Source of the DNA: Selaginella moellendorffii
Taxonomy: Eukaryota; Plantae; Lycopodiophyta
Assembly (NCBI RefSeq): GCF_000143415.4
Contig: NW_003314432.1
Location: 1-64,000 of the forward strand
Length of the DNA: 64,000 nt
Direction of reading: 5' to 3'
Positions 31,420 through 51,376 of the stretch are shown piece after piece (positions within the stretch are counted from its first letter, which is position 1; every line of letters starts with the position of its first letter). A model generated the notes under the pieces. That model made no database searches. It saw only the letters and a list, made by a program, of their open reading frames with translations, and was not told where the DNA came from. The translations under genes and the position numbers were made by a program.

Positions 31420-33905
31420 TTTGACTATCTCATTTTGAAGCTTTGGAATGCTCAAGGAGTCTTTTCTAACTTAGCAAAGATGTTGCTTCATATGATATGA
31501 GGCTAACTATTATCAAACAGTTCTTTTGATAAAGTTATGCAATCTCATGTGCGAGGCACTACTTTGATGATGTCTTATGACTAAGGAGGAACATGAGATG
31601 CATGTGAGGCAAATGTTGCCCCTATTGAGGGAGAACAAGCTGTATTATAAACTGTCAAAGCGTGAGTTCTTCTTGGAGGAGATCACCTATTTCAGACATG
31701 TGGTGCCACGAGATGGTGTGTGGGAAGATCCTCAAAAGACTCAGATAGTCATTGACTAGCTTGTTCCCCCTACTGTGCATGGGTTTCCTTGGTATGGTGG
31801 GAGTCTTTTGCCGGTTTGTGAAGGACCTCTCCTTGATTGCTGCTCCTTTGATGGATATTCTTTGAAACACCACCAAGCATGCTAAGTTGGTGTGGGGTGA
31901 AAGTGTCAAGAAGTGTTTGAGTGGTTAAAGCAATCATGTTTATATTCTACAGATATTTGCTTGTGATAAGGCACTTGTGGTAGAAGGCTAAGCCTCATGC
32001 TATGGAGTCTATGCGTTCAGAGGGTATGGCTCATGAGTCCTTTCTCTTTCTGATCCTAGTGAGGCCATGGGTGTCAGTGTGGACCAAGGAGAGAATGTAT
32101 CTACTCGTGTTCTAGCTGACACTGCTGTCACTAAGCTTTCTGAAGGAGTGAAGAAGAATTGTATCAACTCATCTGAGCTGTACAGTTGTTTGTGCAATGA
32201 GTTGTGCATAGCCAAGTGCTCAGTGTCCTCTTTGACTCTGGTGCTACACATACTTTCATTAACAAGGCTAGTGATGAGGGTATAGCTAAGTTGCATCAAA
32301 CTTGTGGCTTATGTAGGCAATAGGACAGCAGTCTTGCACCAAGACAGCTCCTGAACTGCCAACTCGGGATAGGAAGTTGTATGTTGTAGTTGTTGTGGTC
32401 AAAGAGTGGAGGCATTATCTGTATGGTTGGATTTTTCATGTGGATAACTTTACCACTTGTCACTCTTTTCACTTGCCAGATGGAGCTTCGAGGCCGGCTA
32501 GCTCATTGACTGGAGTTTTTGCAGGAAATGGATGTGCATTCCAAACCACTAGAGGAGTTTAGGTCTGGGGTTTAAGGTGACTAAAACTGATTTCCCCAGG
32601 GATTCCCAAGTAAAAGTCAAAGGGTAATTTTGACCACAGATTACTTGGGAATTCAGAAGATTGATGTTTAAAGCAAAGTTACTAGGTTTTCCAAGATCTA
32701 CAACTTTTCTTTAAGACAATTTTCCTGTTTCTAAAAGGAGTAGACAGTAAAGGTGGTTGTTTCTCCATTGTCTAGGATGGTGAACTCTATCTCATTTGAG
32801 AAGCTCTTCAGTGGTTTGCTAGATGAAATTAAGGAGCTTTCTAACTTCGACTCCTTTGTAGTGAAGGCACATGCAGTTGTTTTGAAGGGGGATGCCTCAT
32901 ACTTATACAATAATAAGTATGTGCACAGTTGTTAGACCGGCCAGGCGGTCACAATGGATTGTCAGAAGCATGAAGGTCTCTACCATAGTTAACCTCAGTG
33001 GAAGTGGGATAGCATTTTCTATGAGTTTCATAGAAAGTGCTTCAAGGCAATGTTGCTATCTGGGTTGTTGTGGATTGTGTGATGATGTTGGCTCACTTCT
33101 TCCTTGTGAAGACAAATGCTAAGGCTTTTGACCTTGCTCAGCTGTATTTCTCTATGGGCTGCCTAAGGATGTTGTAAGTGATCGGGATCCCACGTTCACT
33201 TTGGAGTTTTGGCAGACGGTGTTCCAGAAGCTTGAGACAAAGCTGAGCATGAGCATCCACAGTCAAATGGACAAACAAAACGAGTTAATTAGGTGCTGGA
33301 AGACATGCTGAGATCGTTTGTTGGTCATCTGAAGAGGCAAGGTATTTGGGAGAAGTATCTGCCTTTGTTAGAGTTTACCCATAACTGCGCCTTCCATTTG
33401 GCTATTGAGATGGCTCCGTTTATGGCAATGTATGGCTTTCAACCTTGGTCCCCTGTTGGTATGAACTTGGCTGCACCAGGCAAAGGAGTTGGCTGATGAG
33501 CATCATCAGCACAAGTAGTTTCAGGTTGGAGACAAGGTTTTCCTTCGGTTGTCTGAAGCTCAATGAGCTCTTCAAGGTGGAGGTAGTTCTAAGTTGTTGC
33601 CACAGTACTGTGGGCCTTGGATTATTCTCAAACGAATTGGAGACCTTGCCTATCAACTAGACTTGCCTAGTGGTGTGAAGATTCATCCCGTCTTCTATGT
33701 AGGAAGTTGAAGGCGTGTTTGCATTCTGGTAATATCTTGGACCAGTCTGCGATCAAGATTCCAGAGATAGATGTTTGAAGGTTGGCCCTACTTGTGTGTT
33801 ATAGCAATGGCTAGCGCACACACATTGTAAAACTTGGAGAGAGTTACTTATTCAGTGGAATGGTCATTCTCCATATGATGCTACATGGGAAGCTGAGGAT
33901 GATGT
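31420..33905 (+). mobile_element. chromovirus-type Gypsy pol remnant (RT, displaced PR, RH, INT, chromodomain)
   Basis: EEHEMHVRQMLPLLRENKLY.KLSK.EF (RT); VLFDSGATHTFI (about 32222-32262, PR); KEWRHYLYG (RH); VVSDRDPTFT and LEDMLRSFV..WEKYLPLLEFTHN (INT); FIQWNGHSPYDATWE (about 33850-33892, chromodomain). Confidence 0.85.
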
Positions 33906-34074
33906 TGTTTCCTAATTTTGAGTATGACTTGGATGACATTCCAGAGGAAGAGGAGAAGTAGTTGCTTGCTCTTATCCTTTCTTTCTTTTCTGACCCCGTT
34001 GATGGCTGGAGGTGTTGTGTTATGTGAGACAGTTAGTGGTTTTGTTAGCGGGATGCTTTTCTAGCTTCTCCTCC

Positions 34075-34672
34075 TCAGCTACTGTTCATCATAGTTGGAG
34101 CAGAGGGAAAAATGTCACCGTATTTCGTGATGAACCAGCTGATTCTGGACCTAGGTCTCTGATCAAAGAGCCAAATACCAACTGCAAATTTGCATGTAAA
34201 GAGGTGTTCAAGCATCTTCACGGGGTTTTCATTGCATAGAATACACAGTGTTTTGTGAACTGTGAGCCAATCACCAACAGGGATGTTGTCCTGCACAAGA
34301 AGCCAGCTTACCTTAGCTTCCACCAGTGTCTTCCACATATGTACTTCCGATTCTTCAACTTTCGCATAAGCTTGGTGTCAATTTTATCCATCAAAAGCTC
34401 TCTGCCATGCTTAGACCTGTACATAAAAAAAGACACACTGAACTCATTACCTTCCCAGAATAACTGAGCTGGATCCTATATAAGATCAGATATAGGTACT
34501 CCCCAAACTAGTGTATTGCAGAGCATTCTCCCAGTTGAACCTTAGGATCCAGTTCAGTGTATTTCCCTCTCTGATGTATGGTCCTGATCCTTTTACCGAA
34601 GGCAATCCTGGGAACTGGGACCTCCTCGGGAACTATACATGGAAACAGTGCACCACTGTTATGGGGATAAAA
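34075..34672 (-). mobile_element. LINE (L1-like) ORF2 3' end with zf-RVT motif, left part
   Basis: W.LVQDNIPVGDW....CILCNENPVKMLEHLFTCKFAVGIW. Interrupted on the right by the Copia LTR. Confidence 0.75.
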
Positions 34673-34805
34673 TGATGAGAGAAGCCAGGCCTCACGGCCT
34701 AGCGCTCTATAGAAAATGAGAACACTCCCAGAACAATCCCCTGGGATGGATCTCACACAGGATGGGAAAGAAAACTAAGAAAGCCCTAAACTGAAGGAAT
34801 GCGAC

Positions 34806-39616: not shown

Positions 39617-40285
39617 AACAGAACTGCATTAAACTCTTGATCTGTCACAGCAGCTTCTGGGTCTAGCAGTTGAATCTCCACCACTTTGCACTGAAGCCTG
39701 GTGATGTAGTCTTGCACGCGCTCATGTGGCTACTGCTCCAGGTTCTATAGCTCACTGCGACGAAGAATCACATCCACATCTTCTTGCAGGTCCAGTCCCA
39801 TAATTTCACAAATTGACTTCCAATTCTTAGCAAAACTCTTCTCCACATTCACGTGGACACTCTAGAGAGGGCCAAGTCCTCCTCCTAATGCTCCATTTGC
39901 CCTAGCATCCAGATCTTTCCACTCATTGTATGGATCTGTGTCATCATCGTCCTTGGACAGACATTTTCTTGATCCAGATATTACAGGCCACAGTCCCCAC
40001 CTCATGAACCAGAACTGTGCACGTTCTTTCCAAGCAAGGAAATTCGTCCTATCGAACTGCTCCATGTCTCTGGAGGAAGAAGACGACACCATCCTGTCCT
40101 AGCGTCTATGGGACTGCTCGTGCCAAAAAAAAATCTAACCTATTGCTCTGATACCATGATGAGAGAAGCCAGGCCTCACGGCCTAGCGCTCTATAGAAAA
40201 TGAGAACACTCCCAGAACAATCCCCTGGGATGGATCTCACACAGGATGGGAAAGAAAACTAAGAAAGCCCTAAACTAAAGGAATG

Positions 40286-41250
40286 TTGAGGTGATGGGGT
40301 TGTTTCCATAACAAAGATGATTTGAGTCTCAGCACCATCAAGCATTATCCGATCACGAACCTCAATAACTTCAGTTTGTAAAGCAAGATGAAGGCGATCA
40401 CAAGGGATGCTGCCTTAAGCTTTGATGTGGAGTTTTCATCCTGGGTTGTAATGGGTTGTCATGAGGCCATGTTTGCTCCAAGCGGACGTTAAACAAATAC
40501 CTGACTTTACCTTTTTCATTGTATCATACCTTGTCCACTGCTGAGGAAGAAAAACAAGATCCCAACAAGAACTTTGCTGTAAATGATGGCTTGCTAGCTC
40601 TTTGTAGATCCAATAAGTCTTTGATCAAAGCTCCCACATTTCTATGCCACCTAGGCCAAAAACCTCTACCCAAGCTTGGAGCTGAACAGTCACCTATATA
40701 CTGTTGATTACTGTTCTTATGCGCTACGTTGAAGAACAAGCAATCAGCTAATGCCTCTGTCAGATGGTCTGGTTCTTTCTGACTTAACCTGGGTAGGAGT
40801 GTGACTTCCATATCTTCAACATCTCTTTTGCTATTCCATCCTGGACTTTCTTTGTGTTGAGAGGAGCAATGCCAATCGATTCCTTGTTTATAGTTACCAC
40901 CTTGTCTAGGCAAGATCTTCTGCAGTTGAGCTCTGAAGAGGAGGTGCCAGCTTTGGTTTCGTGGATATAAACCTGACACAAGCACTTTGAAGAGAAGAGC
41001 TTTGGATTGAATTCCTGGGTGTGGCACATTCCGAATAACTGAATTCCACTCTACTTTTGCCCGGACTTTGCACCTGCTGGAGTTTCTAAAGTTTCTACAT
41101 ATGTCGTTGGTGATCAAGTGTTGGTGAGTTATTGGGTGTTGCAGATCCAAGGTTTTTGCTGCGTAGGTCCTTATCACATCGTCCAACAAGTTGGTCCACA
41201 AATCTATGTGGTGACACTCAATGCACAATGTCAAAAGAAGATCCATGTGA
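40286..41250 (-). mobile_element. LINE ORF2 remnant, right part
   Basis: 240-aa ORF 40524-41246 with RAKVEWNSV...PGIQSKALLFK....Y...SWHLL, similar to the post-RT region of plant L1. Same strand as the zf-RVT piece on the other side of the Copia. Confidence 0.6.
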
Positions 41251-43605: not shown

Positions 43606-46600
43606 ATGCGTGCGGCGCTAGGGTTTGTGTGGTGTCTGTCATTTCTCAACAATCTCATGGAGTGGAAAACGTTTTTCAGGGATCCCACTTTCTGGTGGCA
43701 CAACAGGTTCAAGAAGAAAAACAAGTTCTTCTCAGAGTCCTACCCGGATTTCAAACATGTTTCTACCGGAGAGAGCCTGTGGATCGCCAACAGGAAAACA
43801 TCAACCTGGGTCTCTGCAAAACTCGAGTCGCTCGCTGACCCAGCTGTAGGTAAGGCCACCACGGCCCGCTACAAATCTCCACATGCCCCACCTGTAGCTG
43901 GTGATGAACCGGTGAGTTTCGGGAGGCTGATACACCGCGTGAGACACTCAGCTGAGAGCAGATCCCTTTCTTTGGGAAAACAAGCCCATGAAGCTGTGCT
44001 CAAGAGTGATGAGCACAAAAGCAACATCTACTTGTTGACGGGATTGATCGATATGTACTGCAAGTGTGGCGAGCTTGAGGAGGCTCGCAAGATTTTCGAC
44101 TCCATGGGAACCCGGAGTGTTGTGTCCTACAACGCGATCATCCAGGGCTGCGGCTCGAACGGGCAAGCTGAACTTGCTCTGGAGTACTACTCTGCCCTGA
44201 GAGCTGATAACACCATTCAACCCGACGATTGGACACATGTCGCGGTGATCAGCGCCTGCTCCACACTTGCTACCGAATCCAGCGAGAAGAGGGAGAGAGC
44301 TCTACGCATCGGGATGGAGATCCATTCAATGCTGAGCAAGGAGAAGAAACAGCTAGATCTGTTCGTGGCGAATTGCCTGGTAGACATGTACTCCAAGTGT
44401 GGCGAGCTTGAGGAGGCTCGCAAGATTTTCCACTCCATGGGAACTCGGAGTGTTGTTTCCTACACCGCGATCATCCAGGGCTGCAACACGAACGGGCGAG
44501 CTGAACTTGCTCTGGAGTACTACTCTGCCCTGAGAGCTTGTACCACCATTCAACCCAACAATCGGACTCATGTCGCGGTGATCAGCGCCTGCTCCAGACT
44601 TGCTACCGAATCCAGCGAGAAGAGGGAGAGAGCTCTACGCATCGGGATGGAGATCCATTCAATGCTGAGCATGGAGAAGAAACAGGTAGATCTGTTCGTG
44701 GCGACTTGCCTGGTAGACATGTACTGCAAGTGTGGCGAGCTTGAGGAGGCTCGCAAGATTTTCCACTCCATGGGAACTCGGAGTGTTGTGTCCTACAACG
44801 CGATCATCCAGGGCTGCGGCTCGAACGGGCAAGCTGAACTTGCTCTGGAGTATTACTCTGCCCTGAGAGCTTGTACCACCATTCAACCCAACGATCGGAC
44901 ACATGTCGCGGTGATCAGCGCCTGCTCCAGACTTGCTACCGAATCCAGCGAGAAGAGGGAGAGAGCTCTACGCATCGGGATGGAGATGCATTCAATGCTG
45001 AGCAAGGAGAAGAAACAGCTAGATCTGTTCGTGGCGAATTGCCTGGTAGAAATGTACTGCAAGTGTGGCGAGCTTGAGGAGGCTTGCAAGATTTTCCACT
45101 CCATGGGAACTCGGAGTGTTGTGTCCTATACCGCGATCATCCAGGGCTGCAACACGAACGGGCGAGCTGAACTTGCTCTGGAGTACTACTCTGCCCTGAG
45201 AGCTGATAACACCATTCAACCCGACGATCGGACTCATGTCGTGGTGATCAGCGCCTGCTCCACACTTGCTACCGAATCCAGCGAGAAGAGGGAGAGAGCT
45301 CTACGCATCGGGATGGAGATCCATTCAATGCTGAGCAAGGAGAAGAAACAGCTAGATCTGTTCGTGGCAAATTGCCTGGTAGACATGTACTCCAAGTGTG
45401 GCGAGCTTGAGGAGGCTCGCAAGATTTTCCACTCCATGCGAACTCGGAGTGTTGTGTCCTACAACGCGATCATCCAGGGCTGCGGCTCGAACGGGCGAGC
45501 TGAACTTGCTCTGGAGTACTACTCTGCCCTGAGAGCTGATAACACCATTCAAGCTGATGCTTGCACCTACACCTGCGTCCTTGTTGCTTGCGGGAGTGTG
45601 ATGGCGATCAAGCTCGGGAGGGAGATTCACCAGCTGGCGAAGCATAAAGGGCTGCTGAAAAACAATCCAGTTCTGGGCTCCAGCCTGGTGAGCTTCTACG
45701 GCAAATGCGGCGATGTTGATTCTGCTCAGGAAGCGTTTGACGAGTGCCGAGCTCGGGACAACACGGGTCTCTGGAACTCTCTCCTACAGGCTTACACTCT
45801 CCAGGGCCGATCGATCGAGGCCTTGGAGCGTTTCTATTCCATGACTCAGGAGGAGGGCTGTAAAGCTGACGATGTGAGTTTTGTCTCGGTGTTGAACGCT
45901 TGCAGCCATGGTGGTCTGGTGGGGAAAGGAAGGCAGCTTCTGGATGAAATGCCCAAGCAGTATGGAGTCAAGCCACGTCTGGAGCATTATGTGTGCCTGA
46001 TCGATATGCTCGGGCGAGCTAACCTCCTCGACGAAGCTGTGAGAGTTCTCAGAGCCATGCCTTTTGAACCGGATGCAGTGGTTTGGAGGTCCCTGCTCGG
46101 AGCCTGCCGGAAGTGGAAGAATTACACGATCGGCAAACTCGCGTTTGAGCGTCTTGTGGAGATGGATCCCAAGAGCGGCACGCCCTACGCATTGATGGCC
46201 AATATATTTGGAAACCTGGGGATGCTCAGTGAAAGGGCCACTGTTGTGGAGAGAATGAGAGGTGAAGGCAGCTTCAGGGAGCCCGGGAGAAGCTGGTGGA
46301 CGGATGTTAGCTCAGGAAAAGTGCATTCTTTTTCTGTCGGGGATAGGAGTCACTCACAGAGCGACGAGATTGCAGCCAAGCTCAAGCAATTGTTGCTGAG
46401 AATGAAAGAGGAGGGGTACGCGAGCGATGTGATCAACGTTCTAAAAGACATACCCGAGGAAGAGAAAGAGGATCACCTGTGCGGCCACAGTGAGAAGCTT
46501 GCGCTGGGGTGTGCTCTGGTGAACTCGCAGCAGAAGGAGACCATCAGAATTGTGAAAAATCTCCGAGTTTGTGATGATTGCCATGCGGCCACTGCTCTCA

Positions 46601-46695
46601 TCTCTAAGCTGGAAAAAAGGCTAATCATCTGCAAAGATGCCAGTCGGGTTCATGTGTTCCAGGATGGCAGATGTTCCTGTGACAACTACTTTTGA
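43606..46695 (+). CDS. PLS-class PPR-E1-E2-DYW RNA-editing factor with N-terminal OSB-type PDF motif (1029 aa, intronless ORF)
   Basis: Uninterrupted ORF with about 20 P/L/S motifs, P2-L2-S2 (LNACSHGGLV, EHYVCLIDMLGRA), E1/E2, PG box PGRSWWTD, HSEKLA, IVKNLRVCDDCH, H.F.DG.CSC, ending NYF. The exact start codon is uncertain (43606 or 43657). Confidence 0.95.
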   Translation: MRAALGFVWCLSFLNNLMEWKTFFRDPTFWWHNRFKKKNKFFSESYPDFKHVSTGESLWIANRKTSTWVSAKLESLADPAVGKATTARYKSPHAPPVAGDEPVSFGRLIHRVRHSAESRSLSLGKQAHEAVLKSDEHKSNIYLLTGLIDMYCKCGELEEARKIFDSMGTRSVVSYNAIIQGCGSNGQAELALEYYSALRADNTIQPDDWTHVAVISACSTLATESSEKRERALRIGMEIHSMLSKEKKQLDLFVANCLVDMYSKCGELEEARKIFHSMGTRSVVSYTAIIQGCNTNGRAELALEYYSALRACTTIQPNNRTHVAVISACSRLATESSEKRERALRIGMEIHSMLSMEKKQVDLFVATCLVDMYCKCGELEEARKIFHSMGTRSVVSYNAIIQGCGSNGQAELALEYYSALRACTTIQPNDRTHVAVISACSRLATESSEKRERALRIGMEMHSMLSKEKKQLDLFVANCLVEMYCKCGELEEACKIFHSMGTRSVVSYTAIIQGCNTNGRAELALEYYSALRADNTIQPDDRTHVVVISACSTLATESSEKRERALRIGMEIHSMLSKEKKQLDLFVANCLVDMYSKCGELEEARKIFHSMRTRSVVSYNAIIQGCGSNGRAELALEYYSALRADNTIQADACTYTCVLVACGSVMAIKLGREIHQLAKHKGLLKNNPVLGSSLVSFYGKCGDVDSAQEAFDECRARDNTGLWNSLLQAYTLQGRSIEALERFYSMTQEEGCKADDVSFVSVLNACSHGGLVGKGRQLLDEMPKQYGVKPRLEHYVCLIDMLGRANLLDEAVRVLRAMPFEPDAVVWRSLLGACRKWKNYTIGKLAFERLVEMDPKSGTPYALMANIFGNLGMLSERATVVERMRGEGSFREPGRSWWTDVSSGKVHSFSVGDRSHSQSDEIAAKLKQLLLRMKEEGYASDVINVLKDIPEEEKEDHLCGHSEKLALGCALVNSQQKETIRIVKNLRVCDDCHAATALISKLEKRLIICKDASRVHVFQDGRCSCDNYF
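43663..43833 (+). other. PDF motif (OSB/PTAC9 ssDNA-binding-type) coding segment
   Basis: WKTFFRDPTFWWHNRFKKKN...YPDFKHVSTGESLWI......WVSAKL vs recalled OSB consensus W..FF.NP..WWDNR..K.N...PDFKHK.TGEALW.....WV...L. Confidence 0.85.
44053..45552 (+). repeat. 333-bp tandem array (about 4.5 copies; 111-aa P-L-S unit)
   Basis: TGTGGCGAGCTTGAGGAGG recurs at 44065, 44398, 44731, 45064 and 45397. No indels between units. Confidence 0.98.
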
Positions 46696-47499: not shown

Positions 47500-49699
47500 A
47501 TGGCAGCAGCCGCGGAGATTTATGAGGAGAGGCCTGAGGAGGTGGAGGAAGCAGGTAATCCGATTTTAGGGTTGGAAGAGGAAACAGAGCTCTGGGAAAT
47601 GGGGCCAATCGAGCTGGATCTGGGCCTGCTTGTGCTCTATCTTCACCAACACGAGGAGGAAGAGGTGCCCATGGAGGGAGAGGTGGCCATGGAGTGGGAG
47701 GAGCGCGCGGGGTGGCCGGGGTTGGCCGCGGATCTCTGAATCTGGCCCCGGGAGGATTAGGCCATGGTGCCCCGGGAGGAGGAGGCCATGGTTCTACTCT
47801 AGGAGGAGGACGCCGCGGTTCTTCTCCGGGAGGAGGAGGCCATGGATCATCGCCAGGACAAGCCTCGGTGGGAGGAGCCGAAGCCACAGCGGGAGGAGTC
47901 CAAGCCGCGCCCGGAGGAGCCCAAGCCACGTCTGGAGGAGTTCCCCTGGAGGGAGCTCCAACTGCTTTGAGAACCAGAGATGGCGGTGAGTTTACATTTC
48001 TTAGGTTGCATGCATGCATGAGTGATTGAGAGCTCCCGGCAGGGTCATGAAGAAGAGGGAGATGACACCGTCCCCGATCTGGAACAAGACCCGGATGGAT
48101 GCTCACATGGAGGAGCTCGACCACGAGGCTGTCCAGTTTGTGGATACCTCGGGTTTTGCTGCACCTGCTGCTGCGAAGAGAACCCGGGGAAAGAACTGGA
48201 ACCATGCTGAGACCATGCTCCTGATTGATCTCGTTCGGGAAAAACATCTCGCGAAGATTGCGGGGGAGGGAGGAGCAGCCAGCATGTTCTCATGACGAAG
48301 ACACAGCGCTGGAATCTCATCTTTCACCCTTTTGCTTTAGGGTTTAAATGCACATTGCGGATGACAAGAGCCCCGCTGCCTGAGGAAGAAGACCGTGAAC
48401 TTGAGGTTCGTCGGGCTGTGATTGGGAGGAGGTTTTGCATCGGCCTGTGGTGGGTGAAGCCTCGAAATGTCACCACCTGGAGTAAGTTTTCTTTGGAGTA
48501 TTACGATGTGGGGAGGTGGAAGAGGAAACTTCAGATGGAGAAGAGGACCTTCTTCACCATTTGTGGCATGCTGGAGAGTGAAATCCGGAAGCAAGATGAG
48601 TGTGGTGCCGGTGGATGTTCGACTGGGGGTGACTTTGTACAAGCTTTTCAAGAACACAGATTACTTGGACCTAATGTTGCTGACTAGACTGGACGGTGAG
48701 AGCTACTACGACCGGAAGCAGCGGTACTTGGTCATCTTGCAAGGGGTTTGTGATGCCCAGAAGAGGTTCCTCAGTGTCTACGCTGGGTGGCCAGGATGGT
48801 TCTAAAATGTTCTTTTTGCTTTCAGGACGCATCCACGACATGAGAGTTTTTTGTAATTCAACCCTCAGGAACAAGATTGTAGCAAGGGAGCTGCTGACAT
48901 CGCCCGTGGTGTTAGCATATGATGATAGGATCAAGCCATACCTAGTGGGGGACAAAGGGTACCAACTCCAGCAGCATCTGATGATTCCACACACAAGTAA
49001 GTCTTCTTCATTCTACTTTCTTTTGTTCACTTGTTTTGGTTGTTGCTCAGCTCCGAACCTGACACCATCCAAGGCAGCTTTCAACCTTCATCACCACCTT
49101 GCTCGGATTGTTATTGAGCAAGCATTTGGACTTCTTAAAATGAAGTTCAGATGCTTGGATCAAAAACAAAGGATCCAGTCAAAGTACCTTCCCAACATTA
49201 TCAAGAGTTGTTGCATCTTGCACAATTTCTTGATTGATGTTGGGGAGACTGATCTTTGGGCGGAGATCCAAGCCTGGAGGAAAGAGGTGAAAAGGCTCAA
49301 GGACCAGGACCTCTTTGTCGATTATGGTGATCCTGAGGAAGTGGAAGGGGAGCCTCGTGAGGAGTTGCACAGTCCAGAGAATGCGAAAGAGGTTAGAGAG
49401 AACCTCACGTTTTCCCTCTGTCTTTGCCAGTGGCGTTCGTGTTTGCTTTGAAATTTGCCGGGATATAATTCTAAACATTTGAATTTGAATTTGAAATTTC
49501 AAAATTTGAATTAAGTGAATTTTAAGTGTTCGAATGCATTGTTTTTAAGTGCGAATCCGAGGTGTTTTTCCACTTAAATCTATGACATGTGCGAATGCAA
49601 AAGTCCTTATAAGTTTACTTTGCAACACAAATGTTTTCAATGTGCGTTCTTAATTTTTAAAGTGGGTCGCTGAAGTTTTTTTTCACTGCGAATTGGTCC
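47500..49699 (+). mobile_element. PIF/Harbinger element with Myb/SANT-like gene remnant and internally deleted transposase
   Basis: Gly-rich exon, then KRTRGKNWNHAETMLLIDLVREK..KTQRWNLI (Myb/SANT-like, 48170-48320). Transposase WWVKPR..W, MEKRTFFTIC, YYDRKQRY..ILQGVCDAQKRF..AGWPG, intron, IHDMRVF, GDKGY, EQAFGLLK, CILHNF. The GAIDG segment is missing. Candidate 3' end AATTGGTCC at 49699. Confidence 0.88.
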
Positions 49700-49919
49700 T
49701 TTCTCAACATAAAAGATAATGTTTTGCCAAGCTTACCACAGCCACTGGCAACCTTGATTGCCAATGATGTTGTCCTTGGCTGTGGTATCTATAACCATAC
49801 AGCTAGGGCCAAAGTTACACCACCAATGGCCCATAGCAAGCACAGCCATGGTGGCACAAGGTCTCGGCCATGGCTAGCACTACCTTGGCTGGCCTTAGCC
49901 GTGGCATAGCCATCTACTA

Positions 49920-50225
49920 GAGGAGCTAGAGGAGAGCTGTTGTAGGAGGAGTGCTAGAGGAGTTGGAGGAGAGCTGTTGCAGGAGAAGTGCTGGAGGAGC
50001 TGGAGAGCTGCTATAGGAGGAGTGCTGGAGGAGCTGGAGGAGACTCAATGCACAAGGGGTTTTGGAGCAGCTAGAGGGTGAGAAAGAATGATTTCATGAA
50101 AATAAAAAAAAACTGAAAAATCCAAGAGTAGGATTGGCAAAAGTACAATGTGGAAGAGAGTTGTTGCAGGAGGAGCACTAGAGGACATGGAGGAGAGTTG
50201 CTACAGGAAGAGTGTTGGAGGGAGG
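49920..50225 (+). repeat. 37-bp purine-rich minisatellite (3 copies plus 2 dispersed)
   Basis: GGAGAGCTGTTG(T/C)AGGAG(G/A)AGTGCT(A/G)GAGGAG(T/C)TGGA at about 49931, 49968 and 50002, with looser copies at about 50152-50225. Confidence 0.75.
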
Positions 50226-50909
50226 AGATATGTTGCATTGGAGGAAAGTAAGAGCCACTAGAGGAGCCACTAGCCACTAAGGGCACTAGCCGTCACACTC
50301 GTGGCTTCGCCACTAACTAACCCTAACCGAACTCAAATAGATATAATTTTCTGCATTGCACTATGCAACAACGTTTGGTTTGCTTTGATATTGTCAATTT
50401 TTACATAAATAAAAAATTTATATGATGTACTCATTTTAATACATTTTTTTATTCATATGTACTTCTTGTTTATCTCTCAAAGAGTTCAATTAATGTTTTT
50501 TTATCAATTTTATTCTTCCTATAGCAAGCTTAAAGCAAATAGTGAAGAATATAAGGAAGAAGTCCTACACTCTACTAAAATCTTGCAAACTTTCCTTTAA
50601 GAACATTATTACTAGTCAAAAAGTTCACTTTTTTTGAGTAGTCTGATGTGTTTGTCTTTATAGCATGTCCATAAACAGAAAACAAGGAACTTTTTACTTG
50701 CTCCTCATAGTAGAGTATCACAGTGATAGAAGAAGTTTGAGCTTCTTCTCCATGCAATGGGCAACAATATAATCAAGTGGCTGTAGTGATTGATACAAAA
50801 GTTCTCCTGGATCTTGCTTTTTAGGCTGGCGTGGCTAAGACACTGATAAAGGTAAGTTCTGCAAAGATTTAATAAGGTTTTGCTGGATTGTCCTTACTGG
50901 GCTTACAGT

Positions 50910-51376
50910 TAGATCATGGGTGATCAGGAGCTCACAGTTTTGCACAAGATTTGATCAAACATGTTTCTTGCTTGAGCTAGGATCCTTGATCTGCCATGGG
51001 TGGTGATCAATGCATTCACAAAAGGTGCCAGAATGAAATCCAACAGCTTAAGCACTTTCAAAAGACACCCATTCTAGGCATTTGCAGTGATTATTGCATT
51101 CCAAGAGACCAAGGTCCTCTTGCTCAAAACTTCCTGCTATGCTCATGATCACATTTCCAAGATTGAGCTCAATGTTTCTAGAATTCTTCTGTGAATTGTC
51201 ACTTCTTTCTCATACTGCACAGGTCACAAATCACCCAACATGGAGGCTGCAACACTCAATAGTTCTGGGACTGGCAGACAAGCCCTATCCCATGGACAAC
51301 CACTGCTCCTTATGTGGGAATGTGCACATTACAGAGGTTCGTTTCTATTTTCCAGTCTGTCTTTTAACTCCTCAAA
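50910..51376. pseudogene. paralog of the minus-strand PPR relic and first RRP5 exon fragment
   Basis: Collinear with 1965-2426. Minus strand RTLVSWNAIITANA*NG; plus strand GNVHITEV. Confidence 0.7.

What the first reader, a model, noticed from the sequence alone, without database searches (positions are those of the whole stretch)
44053..45558. TALE-like shuffling of half-repeats yields all four PPR code pairs in one array
Seen: five near-identical P motifs spaced exactly 333 bp apart are mosaics of two left-half and two right-half haplotypes. Left A = N5 (AAC) with GSNG(Q); left B = T5 (ACC) with NTNGR. Right X = ADNT..D-last (linked to STL and MYSK downstream); right Y = ACTT..N-last (linked to SRL and MYCK). 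The order is AX, BY, AY, BX, AX. Position-5 codons are at 44131/44464/44797/45130/45463 and last codons at 44224/44557/44890/45223/45556. The halves are separated by a nearly invariant 39-bp stretch (GCTGAACTTGCTCTGGAGTA(C/T)TACTCTGCCCTGAGAGCT). Established PPR code: ND=U, TN=A, NN=C/U, TD=G. Inference: two ancestral units (AX and BY) plus crossover or conversion in the invariant core generate the reciprocal recombinants AY and BX, re-programming specificity without new point mutations. This would be a simple mechanism for making new editing specificities quickly in a lineage with very many editing sites.
Basis: partly seen in the sequence, partly recalled or inferred. Interest (0 to 1): 0.88.

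Follow-up and report, generated by a model that had tools for sequence, protein, structure and literature searches.

The report
Recombination-shuffled PPR triplet array, Selaginella
A spikemoss RNA-editing gene contains 4.5 nearly identical copies of a 111-residue RNA-reading module; their few differences include the base-choosing residues and were reshuffled by recombination among the copies and at least six sister arrays, much like designer PPR or TALE arrays, but whether this retargets editing is untested.

Summary
Window 43606-46695(+) is an intact, intronless 1029-aa PLS-class PPR-DYW gene of Selaginella moellendorffii. It holds 4.5 tandem 333-bp units at 44053-45552. The five P motifs read ND, TN, NN, TD, ND at the stated codons.

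Recombination is certain if the assembly is right. In the window alone, 30 of 55 site pairs fail the four-gamete test (Rm=3).

I found six more arrays of the same unit in the public S. moellendorffii assembly, with 3.5-8.5 units, plus two fragments. Five of the six lie in open reading frames that reach the DYW end. All four cassettes (AY, AX, BY, BX) recur there, often in that order, so they are inherited rather than made in this array.

Breakpoints are spread along the unit (Rm>=12 over 36 units), not confined to the "invariant core". Diversity is concentrated in short islands that contain specificity residues. Common differences are almost all amino-acid-changing (19 nonsynonymous to 1 synonymous). 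Every array has a different code string.

Functional retargeting remains an inference. Unit order could not be checked with reads, because only k=31 contigs were available. I found no prior description. The closest known case is recombination-driven evolution of Rf-like PPR genes.

The parts
43606..46695 (+). Intact intronless ORF (1029 aa plus stop) of a PLS-class PPR-DYW protein
   Evidence: ORF list. Pfam hits: PPR_2 4.7e-76, PPR 6.2e-68, E_motif 1.5e-09, Eplus 8.5e-06, DYW_deaminase 1.4e-31.
43663..43785 (+). N-terminal W..FF.DP..WW.NR...PDFKH..TGE.LW motif (OSB 'PDF'-like), upstream of the PPR tract
   Evidence: Read from the translation. The same motif is visible in P0003, P0008, P0021 and P0157. 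No Pfam hit. Also flagged by other scan notes.
44053..45552 (+). Tandem array of 4.5 units of 333 bp. Each unit (111 aa) is the last 22 aa of an S motif, a 36-aa P motif, a 44-aa L motif and the first 9 aa of the next S motif
   Evidence: TRF, the repeat finder, unit translations.
44053..44385 (+). Unit 1, type AX, P code ND. A mosaic: its 5' part carries the first-unit markers (D16, C at offset 60) and its 3' part matches second units of the paralogs
   Evidence: Segment-wise nearest neighbours and difference lists.
44386..44718 (+). Unit 2, type BY, P code TN. The following S motif has T at position 5
   Evidence: A 60-nt stretch (44531-44590) is unique to this unit among all fetched loci, and a public-run contig matches it exactly.
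44719..45051 (+). Unit 3, type AY, P code NN
   Evidence: Its nearest relatives are AY units of L006 and L001.
45052..45384 (+). Unit 4, type BX, P code TD. Carries the C12 ('EEACKIF') marker shared with unit 4 of L001 and L002
   Evidence: 5 nt differences from L001 unit 4.
45385..45552 (+). Unit 5, partial (offsets 1-168), type AX with R at P16, P code ND. Repeat homology ends inside the P-motif loop
44132..44165 (+). Left diversity island of unit 1 (unit offsets 80-113: P positions 5, 12, 13, 16). The same offsets recur at +333, +666, +999 and +1332
   Evidence: pi 0.108 versus an array mean of 0.050. Internal r2 0.70-0.89.
44166..44205 (+). Low-diversity core (offsets 114-153, helix B of the P motif) between the two islands
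   Evidence: pi 0.012. The similar value at offsets 213-266 (0.018) shows the core is not unique.
44206..44226 (+). Right diversity island of unit 1 (offsets 154-174: P positions 30, 31 and the last residue)
   Evidence: pi 0.116. Internal r2 1.00, and r2 to the left island 0.00-0.03.
44371..44373 (+). S-motif position-5 codon (offsets 319-321), dimorphic N/T among units. It reads N, T, N, N in window units 1-4
   Evidence: 16 N: 20 T over 36 units.
45553..46413 (+). Non-repeated tail: L, S, P2, L2, S2, E1 and E2 motifs
   Evidence: Translation. Pfam E_motif at aa 839-897 and Eplus at aa 906-933. dN/dS versus paralogs is 0.28-0.40.
46414..46692 (+). DYW-type cytidine deaminase domain with HSE and CDDCH signatures. 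The C-terminus reads DNYF
   Evidence: Pfam PF14432 at aa 937-1028, E 1.4e-31. Signatures read from the translation.

Best explanation
The array is a real feature of an intact PPR-DYW (C-to-U RNA-editing type) gene. The gene belongs to a young Selaginella moellendorffii subfamily in which one 111-aa PLS triplet has been amplified to 3.5-8.5 nearly identical copies per gene.

The copies evolve in concert, by two processes acting within arrays and between paralogs. Unequal crossing-over causes copy-number change, unit fusion and a perfect 3-unit duplication. Short- and long-tract gene conversion causes patch replacement.

This keeps the helical scaffold almost uniform. A few short islands stay dimorphic, namely P position 5 with its neighbours, the P last residue with its neighbours, the end of the L motif, and S position 5. 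These islands are reassorted almost freely.

Position 5 (N/T) and the last residue (D/N) together specify the base. The four island combinations therefore give the four canonical pairs NN, ND, TN and TD, and each gene ends up with its own string of them.

Shown here: the mosaic structure, the recombination, the family, the clustering of diversity at code positions, and constraint on the C-terminal part.

Inferred: that the different strings make the proteins read different upstream nucleotides (about -9, -12, -15 and so on from the edited C), and that selection favours this diversity.
For: Structure and gene identity:
- The array and gene architecture are established.

Recombination:
- Window alone: 30 of 55 site pairs are incompatible, Rm=3.
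- 16 units from three loci: 236 of 465 pairs incompatible, Rm>=7, and compatible sites cluster spatially (PHI-like permutation p<1e-4).
- 36 full units from seven arrays: 326 of 903 pairs incompatible, Rm>=12.

The family:
- Arrays of the same unit occur in L001 (6.5 units), L002 (6.5), L003 (3.5), L005 (4.5), L006 minus strand (8.5) and L006 plus strand (5.5). All are from GCA_000143415.2.
- All but the L006 plus-strand gene lie in open frames of 919-1491 codons that end in the DYW domain.
- 24 of 36 units have their nearest relative in another locus.
- L006 minus-strand units 3-5 equal units 6-8 with 0 differences.
- L001 and L005 differ by only 0.4% in the C-terminal 1140 nt, yet their arrays differ in length and order.

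Documented exchanges are listed.

Diversity and selection:
- Diversity islands are shown.
- Amino-acid heterozygosity at the six code positions is 0.344 versus 0.085 elsewhere (permutation p=0.0007).
- Common differences are 19 nonsynonymous to 1 synonymous, versus 32:19 for rare ones (Fisher p=0.007).
- pN/pS is 1.30 in the P motif, versus dN/dS 0.28-0.40 in the C-terminal part.
- Sixteen other sampled S. moellendorffii PPR proteins show only 19-55% triplet self-identity, versus 92% here.
- Seven arrays give seven different P-code strings.
Against: - Unit order in the window could not be checked with reads. The public runs are held only as k=31 contigs. These break inside the array and cannot link sites 41 bp apart.
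- Sites within an island are linked. At the level of about 10 independent blocks, the excess of nonsynonymous common variants is not significant (my estimate p about 0.14).
- The units are related by descent, so the permutation p-values overstate independence.
- pN/pS near 1 over whole units (0.86) also fits relaxed constraint.
- One family member has a broken C-terminus and two loci are fragments. The family therefore also decays.
- No RNA target, no binding data and no locus-specific expression evidence was obtained.
- The L-motif 'code' positions are not known to follow the code.
Confidence: 0.7

Rival explanations
1. Assembly artefact: the AY and BX units, or the unit order, are chimeras produced when reads from near-identical repeats, haplotypes or paralogs were collapsed.
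For: The units are 93-96% identical. At least seven similar arrays exist in the genome. The window is a scaffold with N gaps elsewhere. The reads available to me could not phase the islands.
Against: There are no Ns in the gene. All four cassette types recur in six other independently assembled arrays, partly in the same order. Each window unit carries private differences, 5-9 nt from its nearest relative elsewhere, so the array is not pasted from other loci. A 60-nt stretch unique to window unit 2 is matched exactly by a contig of an independent public run.
Confidence: 0.07
2. Neutral churn: the array and its mosaicism are real, but they are a by-product of unequal crossing-over and gene conversion in a young, partly decaying gene family. 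The code differences have no selected role and may have no effect on editing.
For: Whole-unit pN/pS is 0.86. One member is frame-broken and two loci are fragments. The block-level test for an excess of nonsynonymous common variants is not significant. No target is known.
Against: Six of the seven arrays lie in long open frames, with only one 3-bp in-frame indel in 43 units. C-terminal dN/dS is 0.28-0.40. Diversity is concentrated at four of the six code positions. Common variants are 19 nonsynonymous to 1 synonymous.
Confidence: 0.22
3. One reading: two parental units (AX and BY) in this array recombined in the invariant 39-bp core and produced the reciprocal products AY and BX in place.
For: The window shows exactly the four combinations, with a clean switch between offsets 113 and 154.
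Against: AY and BX units exist in all or most paralogous arrays. Window unit 4 (BX) is 5 nt from L001 unit 4. Window unit 3 (AY) aligns along its whole length with AY units elsewhere. Site 183 breaks the two-half model inside the window. Breakpoints are not concentrated in the core.
Confidence: 0.06
4. Convergent point mutation: the four code pairs arose by independent substitutions at positions 5 and last, without any exchange of sequence.
For: One such case exists: L003 unit 2 has N5 encoded by AAT on a B-type background.
Against: Position 5 is linked to four further substitutions and the last residue to three. These multi-site haplotypes reassort as blocks. At least five identical parallel changes would be needed in the window alone.
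Confidence: 0.02

Closest known systems
Restorer-of-fertility-like (RFL) P-class PPR gene clusters of angiosperms (for example the Oryza chromosome 10 cluster; radish Rfo)
   Same: Both are PPR genes whose RNA-recognition repertoire changes by homologous recombination, unequal crossing-over and gene conversion. Whole motifs are duplicated, deleted or inserted, and diversity is high at positions 5 and 35 (PMC5075784).
   Different: RFLs are P-class proteins without E/DYW domains. They act on CMS transcripts, and their motifs are divergent. Exchange is mainly between clustered genes. Here the gene is a PLS-DYW editing-type protein of a lycophyte. The exchanged unit is a whole PLS triplet about 95% identical to its neighbours, and the variation is reduced to a minimal 2x2 cassette set.
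TALE repeat arrays of Xanthomonas/Ralstonia (my own knowledge, not tested here)
   Same: Both have tandem near-identical repeats and one nucleotide read per repeat. Variation is concentrated at the specificity residues, and arrays differ by repeat number and order.
   Different: The fold and the ligand differ (33-35-aa repeats binding DNA, versus PPR helical hairpins binding RNA). In TALEs the two specificity residues are adjacent (12/13), so recombination moves them together. In PPR motifs they lie about 90 bp apart, so exchange between them creates new pairs. This is an analogy, not membership.
Synthetic consensus PLS-DYW / designer PPR editing factors (for example dsn3PLS-DYW, 9S-DYW)
   Same: Both use an identical scaffold repeated several times, with only the fifth and last residues changed, using the canonical ND/NN/TN/TD pairs. 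Both end in P2-L2-S2-E1-E2-DYW (PMC8110955 abstract; PMC8809517).
   Different: The synthetic ones are engineered. The array here is natural. Its L motifs are 44 aa long, its S motifs use N/T plus S, and its activity is untested.
Canonical natural PLS-DYW editing factors (for example Physcomitrium PPR56/PPR65)
   Same: Same domain order, intronless gene, and DYW domain with HxE and CxxCH signatures.
   Different: In canonical factors the PLS triplets of one protein are only distantly similar. The 16 other S. moellendorffii PPR proteins I sampled show 19-55% identity over 100 aa, versus 92% here.

Membership tests
PLS-class PPR-DYW RNA-editing factor | Tandem PPR motifs arranged as P-L-S triplets | tested here: met
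   Pfam PPR_2, PPR, PPR_1 and PPR_3 hits along aa 135-830. My manual parsing gives a 36-aa P, a 44-aa L and a 31-aa S per 111-aa unit.
PLS-class PPR-DYW RNA-editing factor | E1/E2 motifs followed by a DYW cytidine-deaminase domain with HxE and CxxCH zinc-binding signatures | tested here: met
   Pfam E_motif 1.5e-09, Eplus 8.5e-06 and DYW_deaminase 1.4e-31 at aa 937-1028. HSE and CDDCH are read in the translation. The C-terminal tripeptide is NYF rather than DYW.
PLS-class PPR-DYW RNA-editing factor | Site-specific C-to-U editing of an organellar transcript | not testable with these tools
   No organelle genome, editing-site list or assay was available.
PLS-class PPR-DYW RNA-editing factor | Organellar targeting | not tested
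   The N-terminus carries a PDF-like motif. No targeting prediction was run.
Rf-like (RFL) PPR genes | P-class architecture (only 35-aa P motifs, no E/DYW domains) | tested here: not met
   L and S motifs and E/DYW domains are present. The gene evolves like an RFL but is not one.
Rf-like (RFL) PPR genes | Sequence evolution dominated by recombination or unequal crossing-over, with high diversity at code positions | tested here: met
   Rm>=12 and copy number 3.5-8.5. Code-position heterozygosity is 0.344 versus 0.085 elsewhere.
TALE-type repeat arrays | 33-35-aa near-identical repeats with a repeat-variable diresidue at positions 12/13 that binds DNA | tested here: not met
   The repeat is a 111-aa PPR triplet, and the specificity residues are position 5 and the last residue of each motif. 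Only the evolutionary logic is shared.
Tandem repeat array under concerted evolution | Head-to-tail copies more alike than expected from their age, with copy-number variation among loci and mosaic units | tested here: met
   Units are 93-96% identical. Unit pS is 0.056 versus paralog dS 0.03-0.04. Copy number ranges from 3.5 to 8.5. There is a perfect 999-bp internal duplication.

The most novel reading that the evidence does not exclude
This subfamily is a natural 'programmable' PLS scaffold. Selection keeps a minimal set of code cassettes (N/T at position 5, D/N at the last residue, N/T in the S motif) dimorphic, while conversion homogenises everything else. Reassortment of cassettes by unequal crossing-over and short-tract conversion, rather than point mutation, is then a main route by which Selaginella generates editing factors for new sites.
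Probability: 0.3. Interest if true: 0.85.

Novelty: new variant of a known kind. Interest (0 to 1): 0.66.

Why it matters
Selaginella edits thousands of organellar cytidines and has one of the largest PPR families known (3,861 genes counted in PMC13386178). How so many specificities arise is an open question.

The usual account for editing factors is gene duplication followed by point mutation. Recombination-driven diversification has been described for Rf-like P-class genes only (PMC5075784).

This family shows editing-type PLS-DYW genes whose RNA-reading tract is built from near-identical triplets that differ mainly at the code residues and are visibly reshuffled. Three things follow.

1. 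It gives a concrete, testable system. There are six open-frame natural variants on one scaffold, each with a different code string and a nearly identical deaminase end.
2. It is a natural counterpart of synthetic PLS-DYW designs, and could inform them.
3. Current gene models splice these arrays out as introns, so such genes are undercounted and mis-described in annotation-based PPR surveys.

Tried and rejected
- Read-level check of unit order. The look-up of sequencing runs failed twice and then listed 24 runs, all held as Logan contigs. Read laying on two runs guessed to be DNA and two guessed to be RNA gave only short pieces inside the array. No piece linked the left and right islands.
- At 12 or more places in the unique gene parts, the contigs carry the letter shared by paralogs L001 and L002 rather than the window's letter. 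I read this as majority-path consensus over paralogs, not as evidence against the window. The contigs therefore cannot tell the loci apart, and locus-specific expression could not be established.
- The window's own protein model was not found in either protein search. I could not place the window on a named scaffold, nor decide which loci are alleles and which are paralogs.
- The C-terminal distances do not pair the window with one partner. It is 1.2% from both L001 and L005.
- L004 and L007 hold only fragments of the array and were left out of all statistics. The terminal half-units were used only up to offset 168.
- The five full units of the frame-broken L006 plus-strand gene were kept, which may add rare variants.
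- A recombination 'hotspot' in the 39-40-bp core was considered and rejected.
- Six literature searches found no description of near-identical PLS triplet arrays. The library lacks most subscription papers, for example Gutmann et al. 2020 in Mol Plant, so prior mention cannot be excluded.
- Target-site prediction was not attempted, because no organelle sequence was available.
Full report
**1. What is at the coordinates**

Window 43606-46695(+) is one uninterrupted ORF of 1029 codons. Pfam finds PPR motifs along most of it, then E and E+ motifs, then a DYW deaminase domain at aa 937-1028 with E=1.4e-31. The HSE and CDDCH zinc-site signatures are present in the translation. This is the architecture of a plant organellar C-to-U RNA-editing factor of the PLS-DYW class.

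Tandem Repeats Finder reports a 333-bp period with 4.5 copies, 94% matches and no indels at 44053-45552. The repeat finder gives five copies spaced exactly 333 bp.

Each 111-aa unit parses by eye as follows: the last 22 residues of an S motif, a 36-aa P motif, a 44-aa L motif, and the first 9 residues of the next S motif.

**2.

They read N/D, T/N, N/N, T/D and N/D.

- Position 5 is linked to P positions 12, 13 and 16 (GS..Q versus NT..R).
- The last residue is linked to P positions 30 and 31 (DN versus CT).
- The 39 bp between the two blocks differ only at one C/T site.

Among the four full units, 11 sites are split 2:2. Of the 55 pairs, 30 show all four gametes, so Rm=3. Recurrent mutation would need at least five identical parallel changes. 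If the assembly is right, sequence exchange among units is therefore certain.

A synonymous site at offset 183 follows the 'left' partition although it lies in the 'right' half. The S motif's own position 5 (offset 320) is also N/T dimorphic.

**3. The array is one of a family**

The closest proteins in the 5.8-billion-protein collection are Selaginella moellendorffii models at 78-98% identity. Everything else is at or below 46%. Scan notes also name this genome as S. moellendorffii.

I fetched the DNA behind those models. The same 333-bp unit occurs in arrays at these loci:

| Locus | Units |
|---|---|
| L001 | 6.5 |
| L002 | 6.5 |
| L003 | 3.5 |
| L005 | 4.5 |
| L006 minus strand | 8.5 |
| L006 plus strand | 5.5 |
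| L004, L007 | fragments only |

Continuous open frames of 919-1491 codons run through all the arrays. All but the L006 plus-strand gene end in the DYW domain. The deposited gene models are much shorter (for example 617, 566, 497 and 506 aa), because they splice most units out as introns.

Sixteen other S. moellendorffii PPR proteins that I sampled have only 19-55% identity between successive triplets, against 92% here. This family is therefore unusual even in this genome.

**4. Cassette orders**

A/B denotes the left island and X/Y the right island. The orders are:

| Array | Order |
|---|---|
| Window | AX BY AY BX AX |
| L001 | AY AX BY BX BX BX BX |
| L002 | AY AX BY BY AX BX BX |
| L003 | AY (hybrid)Y AX BX |
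| L005 | AX AX BX BX AX |
| L006 minus strand | AY AX BY BX BX BY BX BX BX |
| L006 plus strand | AY AY AY AX BY BX |

Three arrays begin AY-AX-BY-BX, so all four combinations predate the divergence of these genes. Window unit 4 (BX) is 5 nt from L001 unit 4. Window unit 3 (AY) aligns along its whole length with AY units elsewhere. The window's AY and BX units are thus inherited, not reciprocal products made in this array.

**5. Recombination is pervasive and not confined to the core**

- With 16 full units, 236 of 465 site pairs are incompatible and Rm>=7. Compatible sites cluster along the sequence (permutation p<1e-4).
- With 36 full units, 326 of 903 pairs are incompatible and Rm>=12. The intervals are spread over the whole unit.
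- LD is high inside the left island (r2 0.70-0.89) and complete inside the right island. It is 0.00-0.03 between the two, 41 bp apart.
- LD also collapses over 6-11 bp next to the right island.
- The 40-bp core has pi 0.012, but offsets 213-266 have pi 0.018, so the core is not special.

**6. Concrete events**

- (a) L005 unit 1 equals the first units of other loci except for a patch between about offsets 149 and 201. That patch matches L005 unit 3 and converts the first P motif from NN to ND.
- (b) L001 unit 4 and L002 unit 4 share their 5' 153 nt, including a private marker. They differ at 11 sites from offset 154 onward, which switches TD to TN.
- (c) Window unit 1 has first-unit markers up to offset 60 and second-unit sequence downstream. 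This is the product expected of an unequal crossover that deleted one unit.
- (d) L006 minus-strand units 3-5 and 6-8 are identical over 999 bp, a very recent three-unit duplication.
- (e) L003 unit 2 has N at position 5, encoded by AAT, on a B-type background. This is a point mutation, so not all code change is by exchange.

L001 and L005 differ by only 0.4% in the C-terminal 1140 nt, yet have arrays of 6.5 and 4.5 units with different orders. Either the arrays change faster than the rest of the gene, or the tails are being homogenised.

**7. Where the differences lie**

Nucleotide diversity among units is 0.108 and 0.116 in the two P-motif islands and 0.079 at the end of the L motif. The scaffold stretches have 0.012-0.026.

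Of the six code codons per unit (position 5 and last of P, L and S), four are strongly polymorphic. Mean amino-acid heterozygosity is 0.344 at code codons versus 0.085 at the other 105 (permutation p=0.0007).

Variants with minor-allele frequency of at least 0.2 are 19 nonsynonymous to 1 synonymous, plus 2 mixed. Rare variants are 32:19 (Fisher p=0.007).

pN/pS is 1.30 in the P motif, 0.74 in L and 0.54 in S. dN/dS in the non-repeated C-terminal part is 0.28-0.40, with dS 0.03-0.04.

These numbers fit selection for, or at least tolerance of, amino-acid differences between units on a constrained protein. Sites within an island are linked and the units are related, so the p-values are optimistic. 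At the level of about ten independent blocks, the nonsynonymous excess is not significant.

**8. Mechanism I commit to**

Concerted evolution of a recently amplified PLS-triplet array proceeds by unequal crossing-over and gene conversion, within arrays and between paralogs. A small set of code-bearing islands is kept dimorphic and reassorted.

By the established PPR code (N/D for U, N/N for C over U, T/N for A, T/D for G; my own knowledge, and consistent with the use of positions 5 and last in PMC5075784 and PMC8809517), the seven arrays carry seven different strings. With S2 aligned to -4, the array P motifs would face nucleotides -9, -12, -15 and so on. The nearly identical P2-L2-S2-E-DYW end would face a shared proximal element.

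That last step, and any adaptive value, is inference.

**9. What could not be done**

The only read data offered were k=31 contigs. They fragment in the array and cannot link the islands. They also follow the letter shared by paralogs at 12 or more places.

One contig from an independent run, labelled 'RNA?', does match exactly a 60-nt stretch that is unique to window unit 2 among all fetched loci. At least that unit therefore exists outside this assembly.

An assembly chimera remains possible but unlikely. All cassette types recur in independently assembled arrays, and each window unit has private differences.

**10. Comparison with what is known**

Recombination, unequal crossing-over and motif-level duplication or deletion that alter predicted RNA recognition are documented for Rf-like P-class PPR clusters (PMC5075784). 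I found no paper describing near-identical PLS triplet arrays, or cassette reassortment, in DYW editing factors.

The resemblance to TALE arrays and to synthetic consensus PLS-DYW proteins is one of logic, not of family. I therefore rate this as a new variant of a known kind, of moderately high interest.

Noticed in passing
L001:2003-5596; L002:6001-9705; L005:10001-13090; L006:8001-12150: The deposited gene models (P0001 617 aa, P0002 566 aa, P0124 497 aa, P0128 506 aa) span 3.1-4.2 kb but remove most 333-bp units as introns. Continuous ORFs run through the arrays, so these PPR genes are mis-modelled and their repeat arrays are hidden from protein-based surveys.
   Followed up: partly
L006:3354-6185 (minus strand) and L006:9176-11008 (plus strand): Two family members lie head to head about 3 kb apart. 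The minus-strand gene has 8.5 units, including a perfect 999-bp (three-unit) duplication. The plus-strand gene has 5.5 units, but its frame is broken downstream of the array, so it is a likely pseudogene.
   Followed up: partly
window:43663-43785: The N-terminus of the ORF carries a W..FF.DP..WW.NR...PDFKH..TGE.LW motif, like the 'PDF' motif of OSB ssDNA-binding proteins. The same motif is visible at the N-termini of P0003 (Calypogeia), P0008 (Diphasiastrum), P0021 and P0157 (Selaginella). There is no Pfam hit. Other scan notes treat this as their main finding.
   Followed up: partly
window:34673-40285: A stretch of about 5.6 kb is present in the window but absent at the collinear position in paralogous loci L002 and L005. 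The flanking matches at 32913-34672 and 40286-40920 are adjacent in those loci. This is probably a transposon insertion. A 136-bp direct repeat (34666-34801 and 40150-40285) sits at its two ends.
   Followed up: no
window:48696-49451 and window:1-2430 vs 48893-51376: There is a DDE_Tnp_4 (PIF/Harbinger-type) transposase ORF (Pfam 2.6e-19). About 2.4 kb around it is duplicated at 96-100% identity at the start of the window. These are two copies of one element family.
   Followed up: partly
window:43699-46575 (12 or more single places): In four public runs the laid contigs carry the letter shared by paralogs L001 and L002 instead of the window's letter, at every place where the window is the odd one out. 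This looks like majority-path consensus of the k=31 assembler over paralogs. Such contigs cannot be used to call alleles or editing in this family.
   Followed up: yes
L003:9119-9451: Unit 2 of L003 combines N at P position 5 (codon AAT) with the B-type NTNGR context. This is the one clear case where a code residue changed by point mutation rather than by exchange.
   Followed up: yes
P0005, P0007, P0013, P0020, P0058, P0062 and others: Other S. moellendorffii PLS proteins have triplet periods of 108-127 aa rather than about 101 aa. The long (about 44-aa) L motif with an acidic insertion therefore seems general in this species, not special to this family.
   Followed up: no
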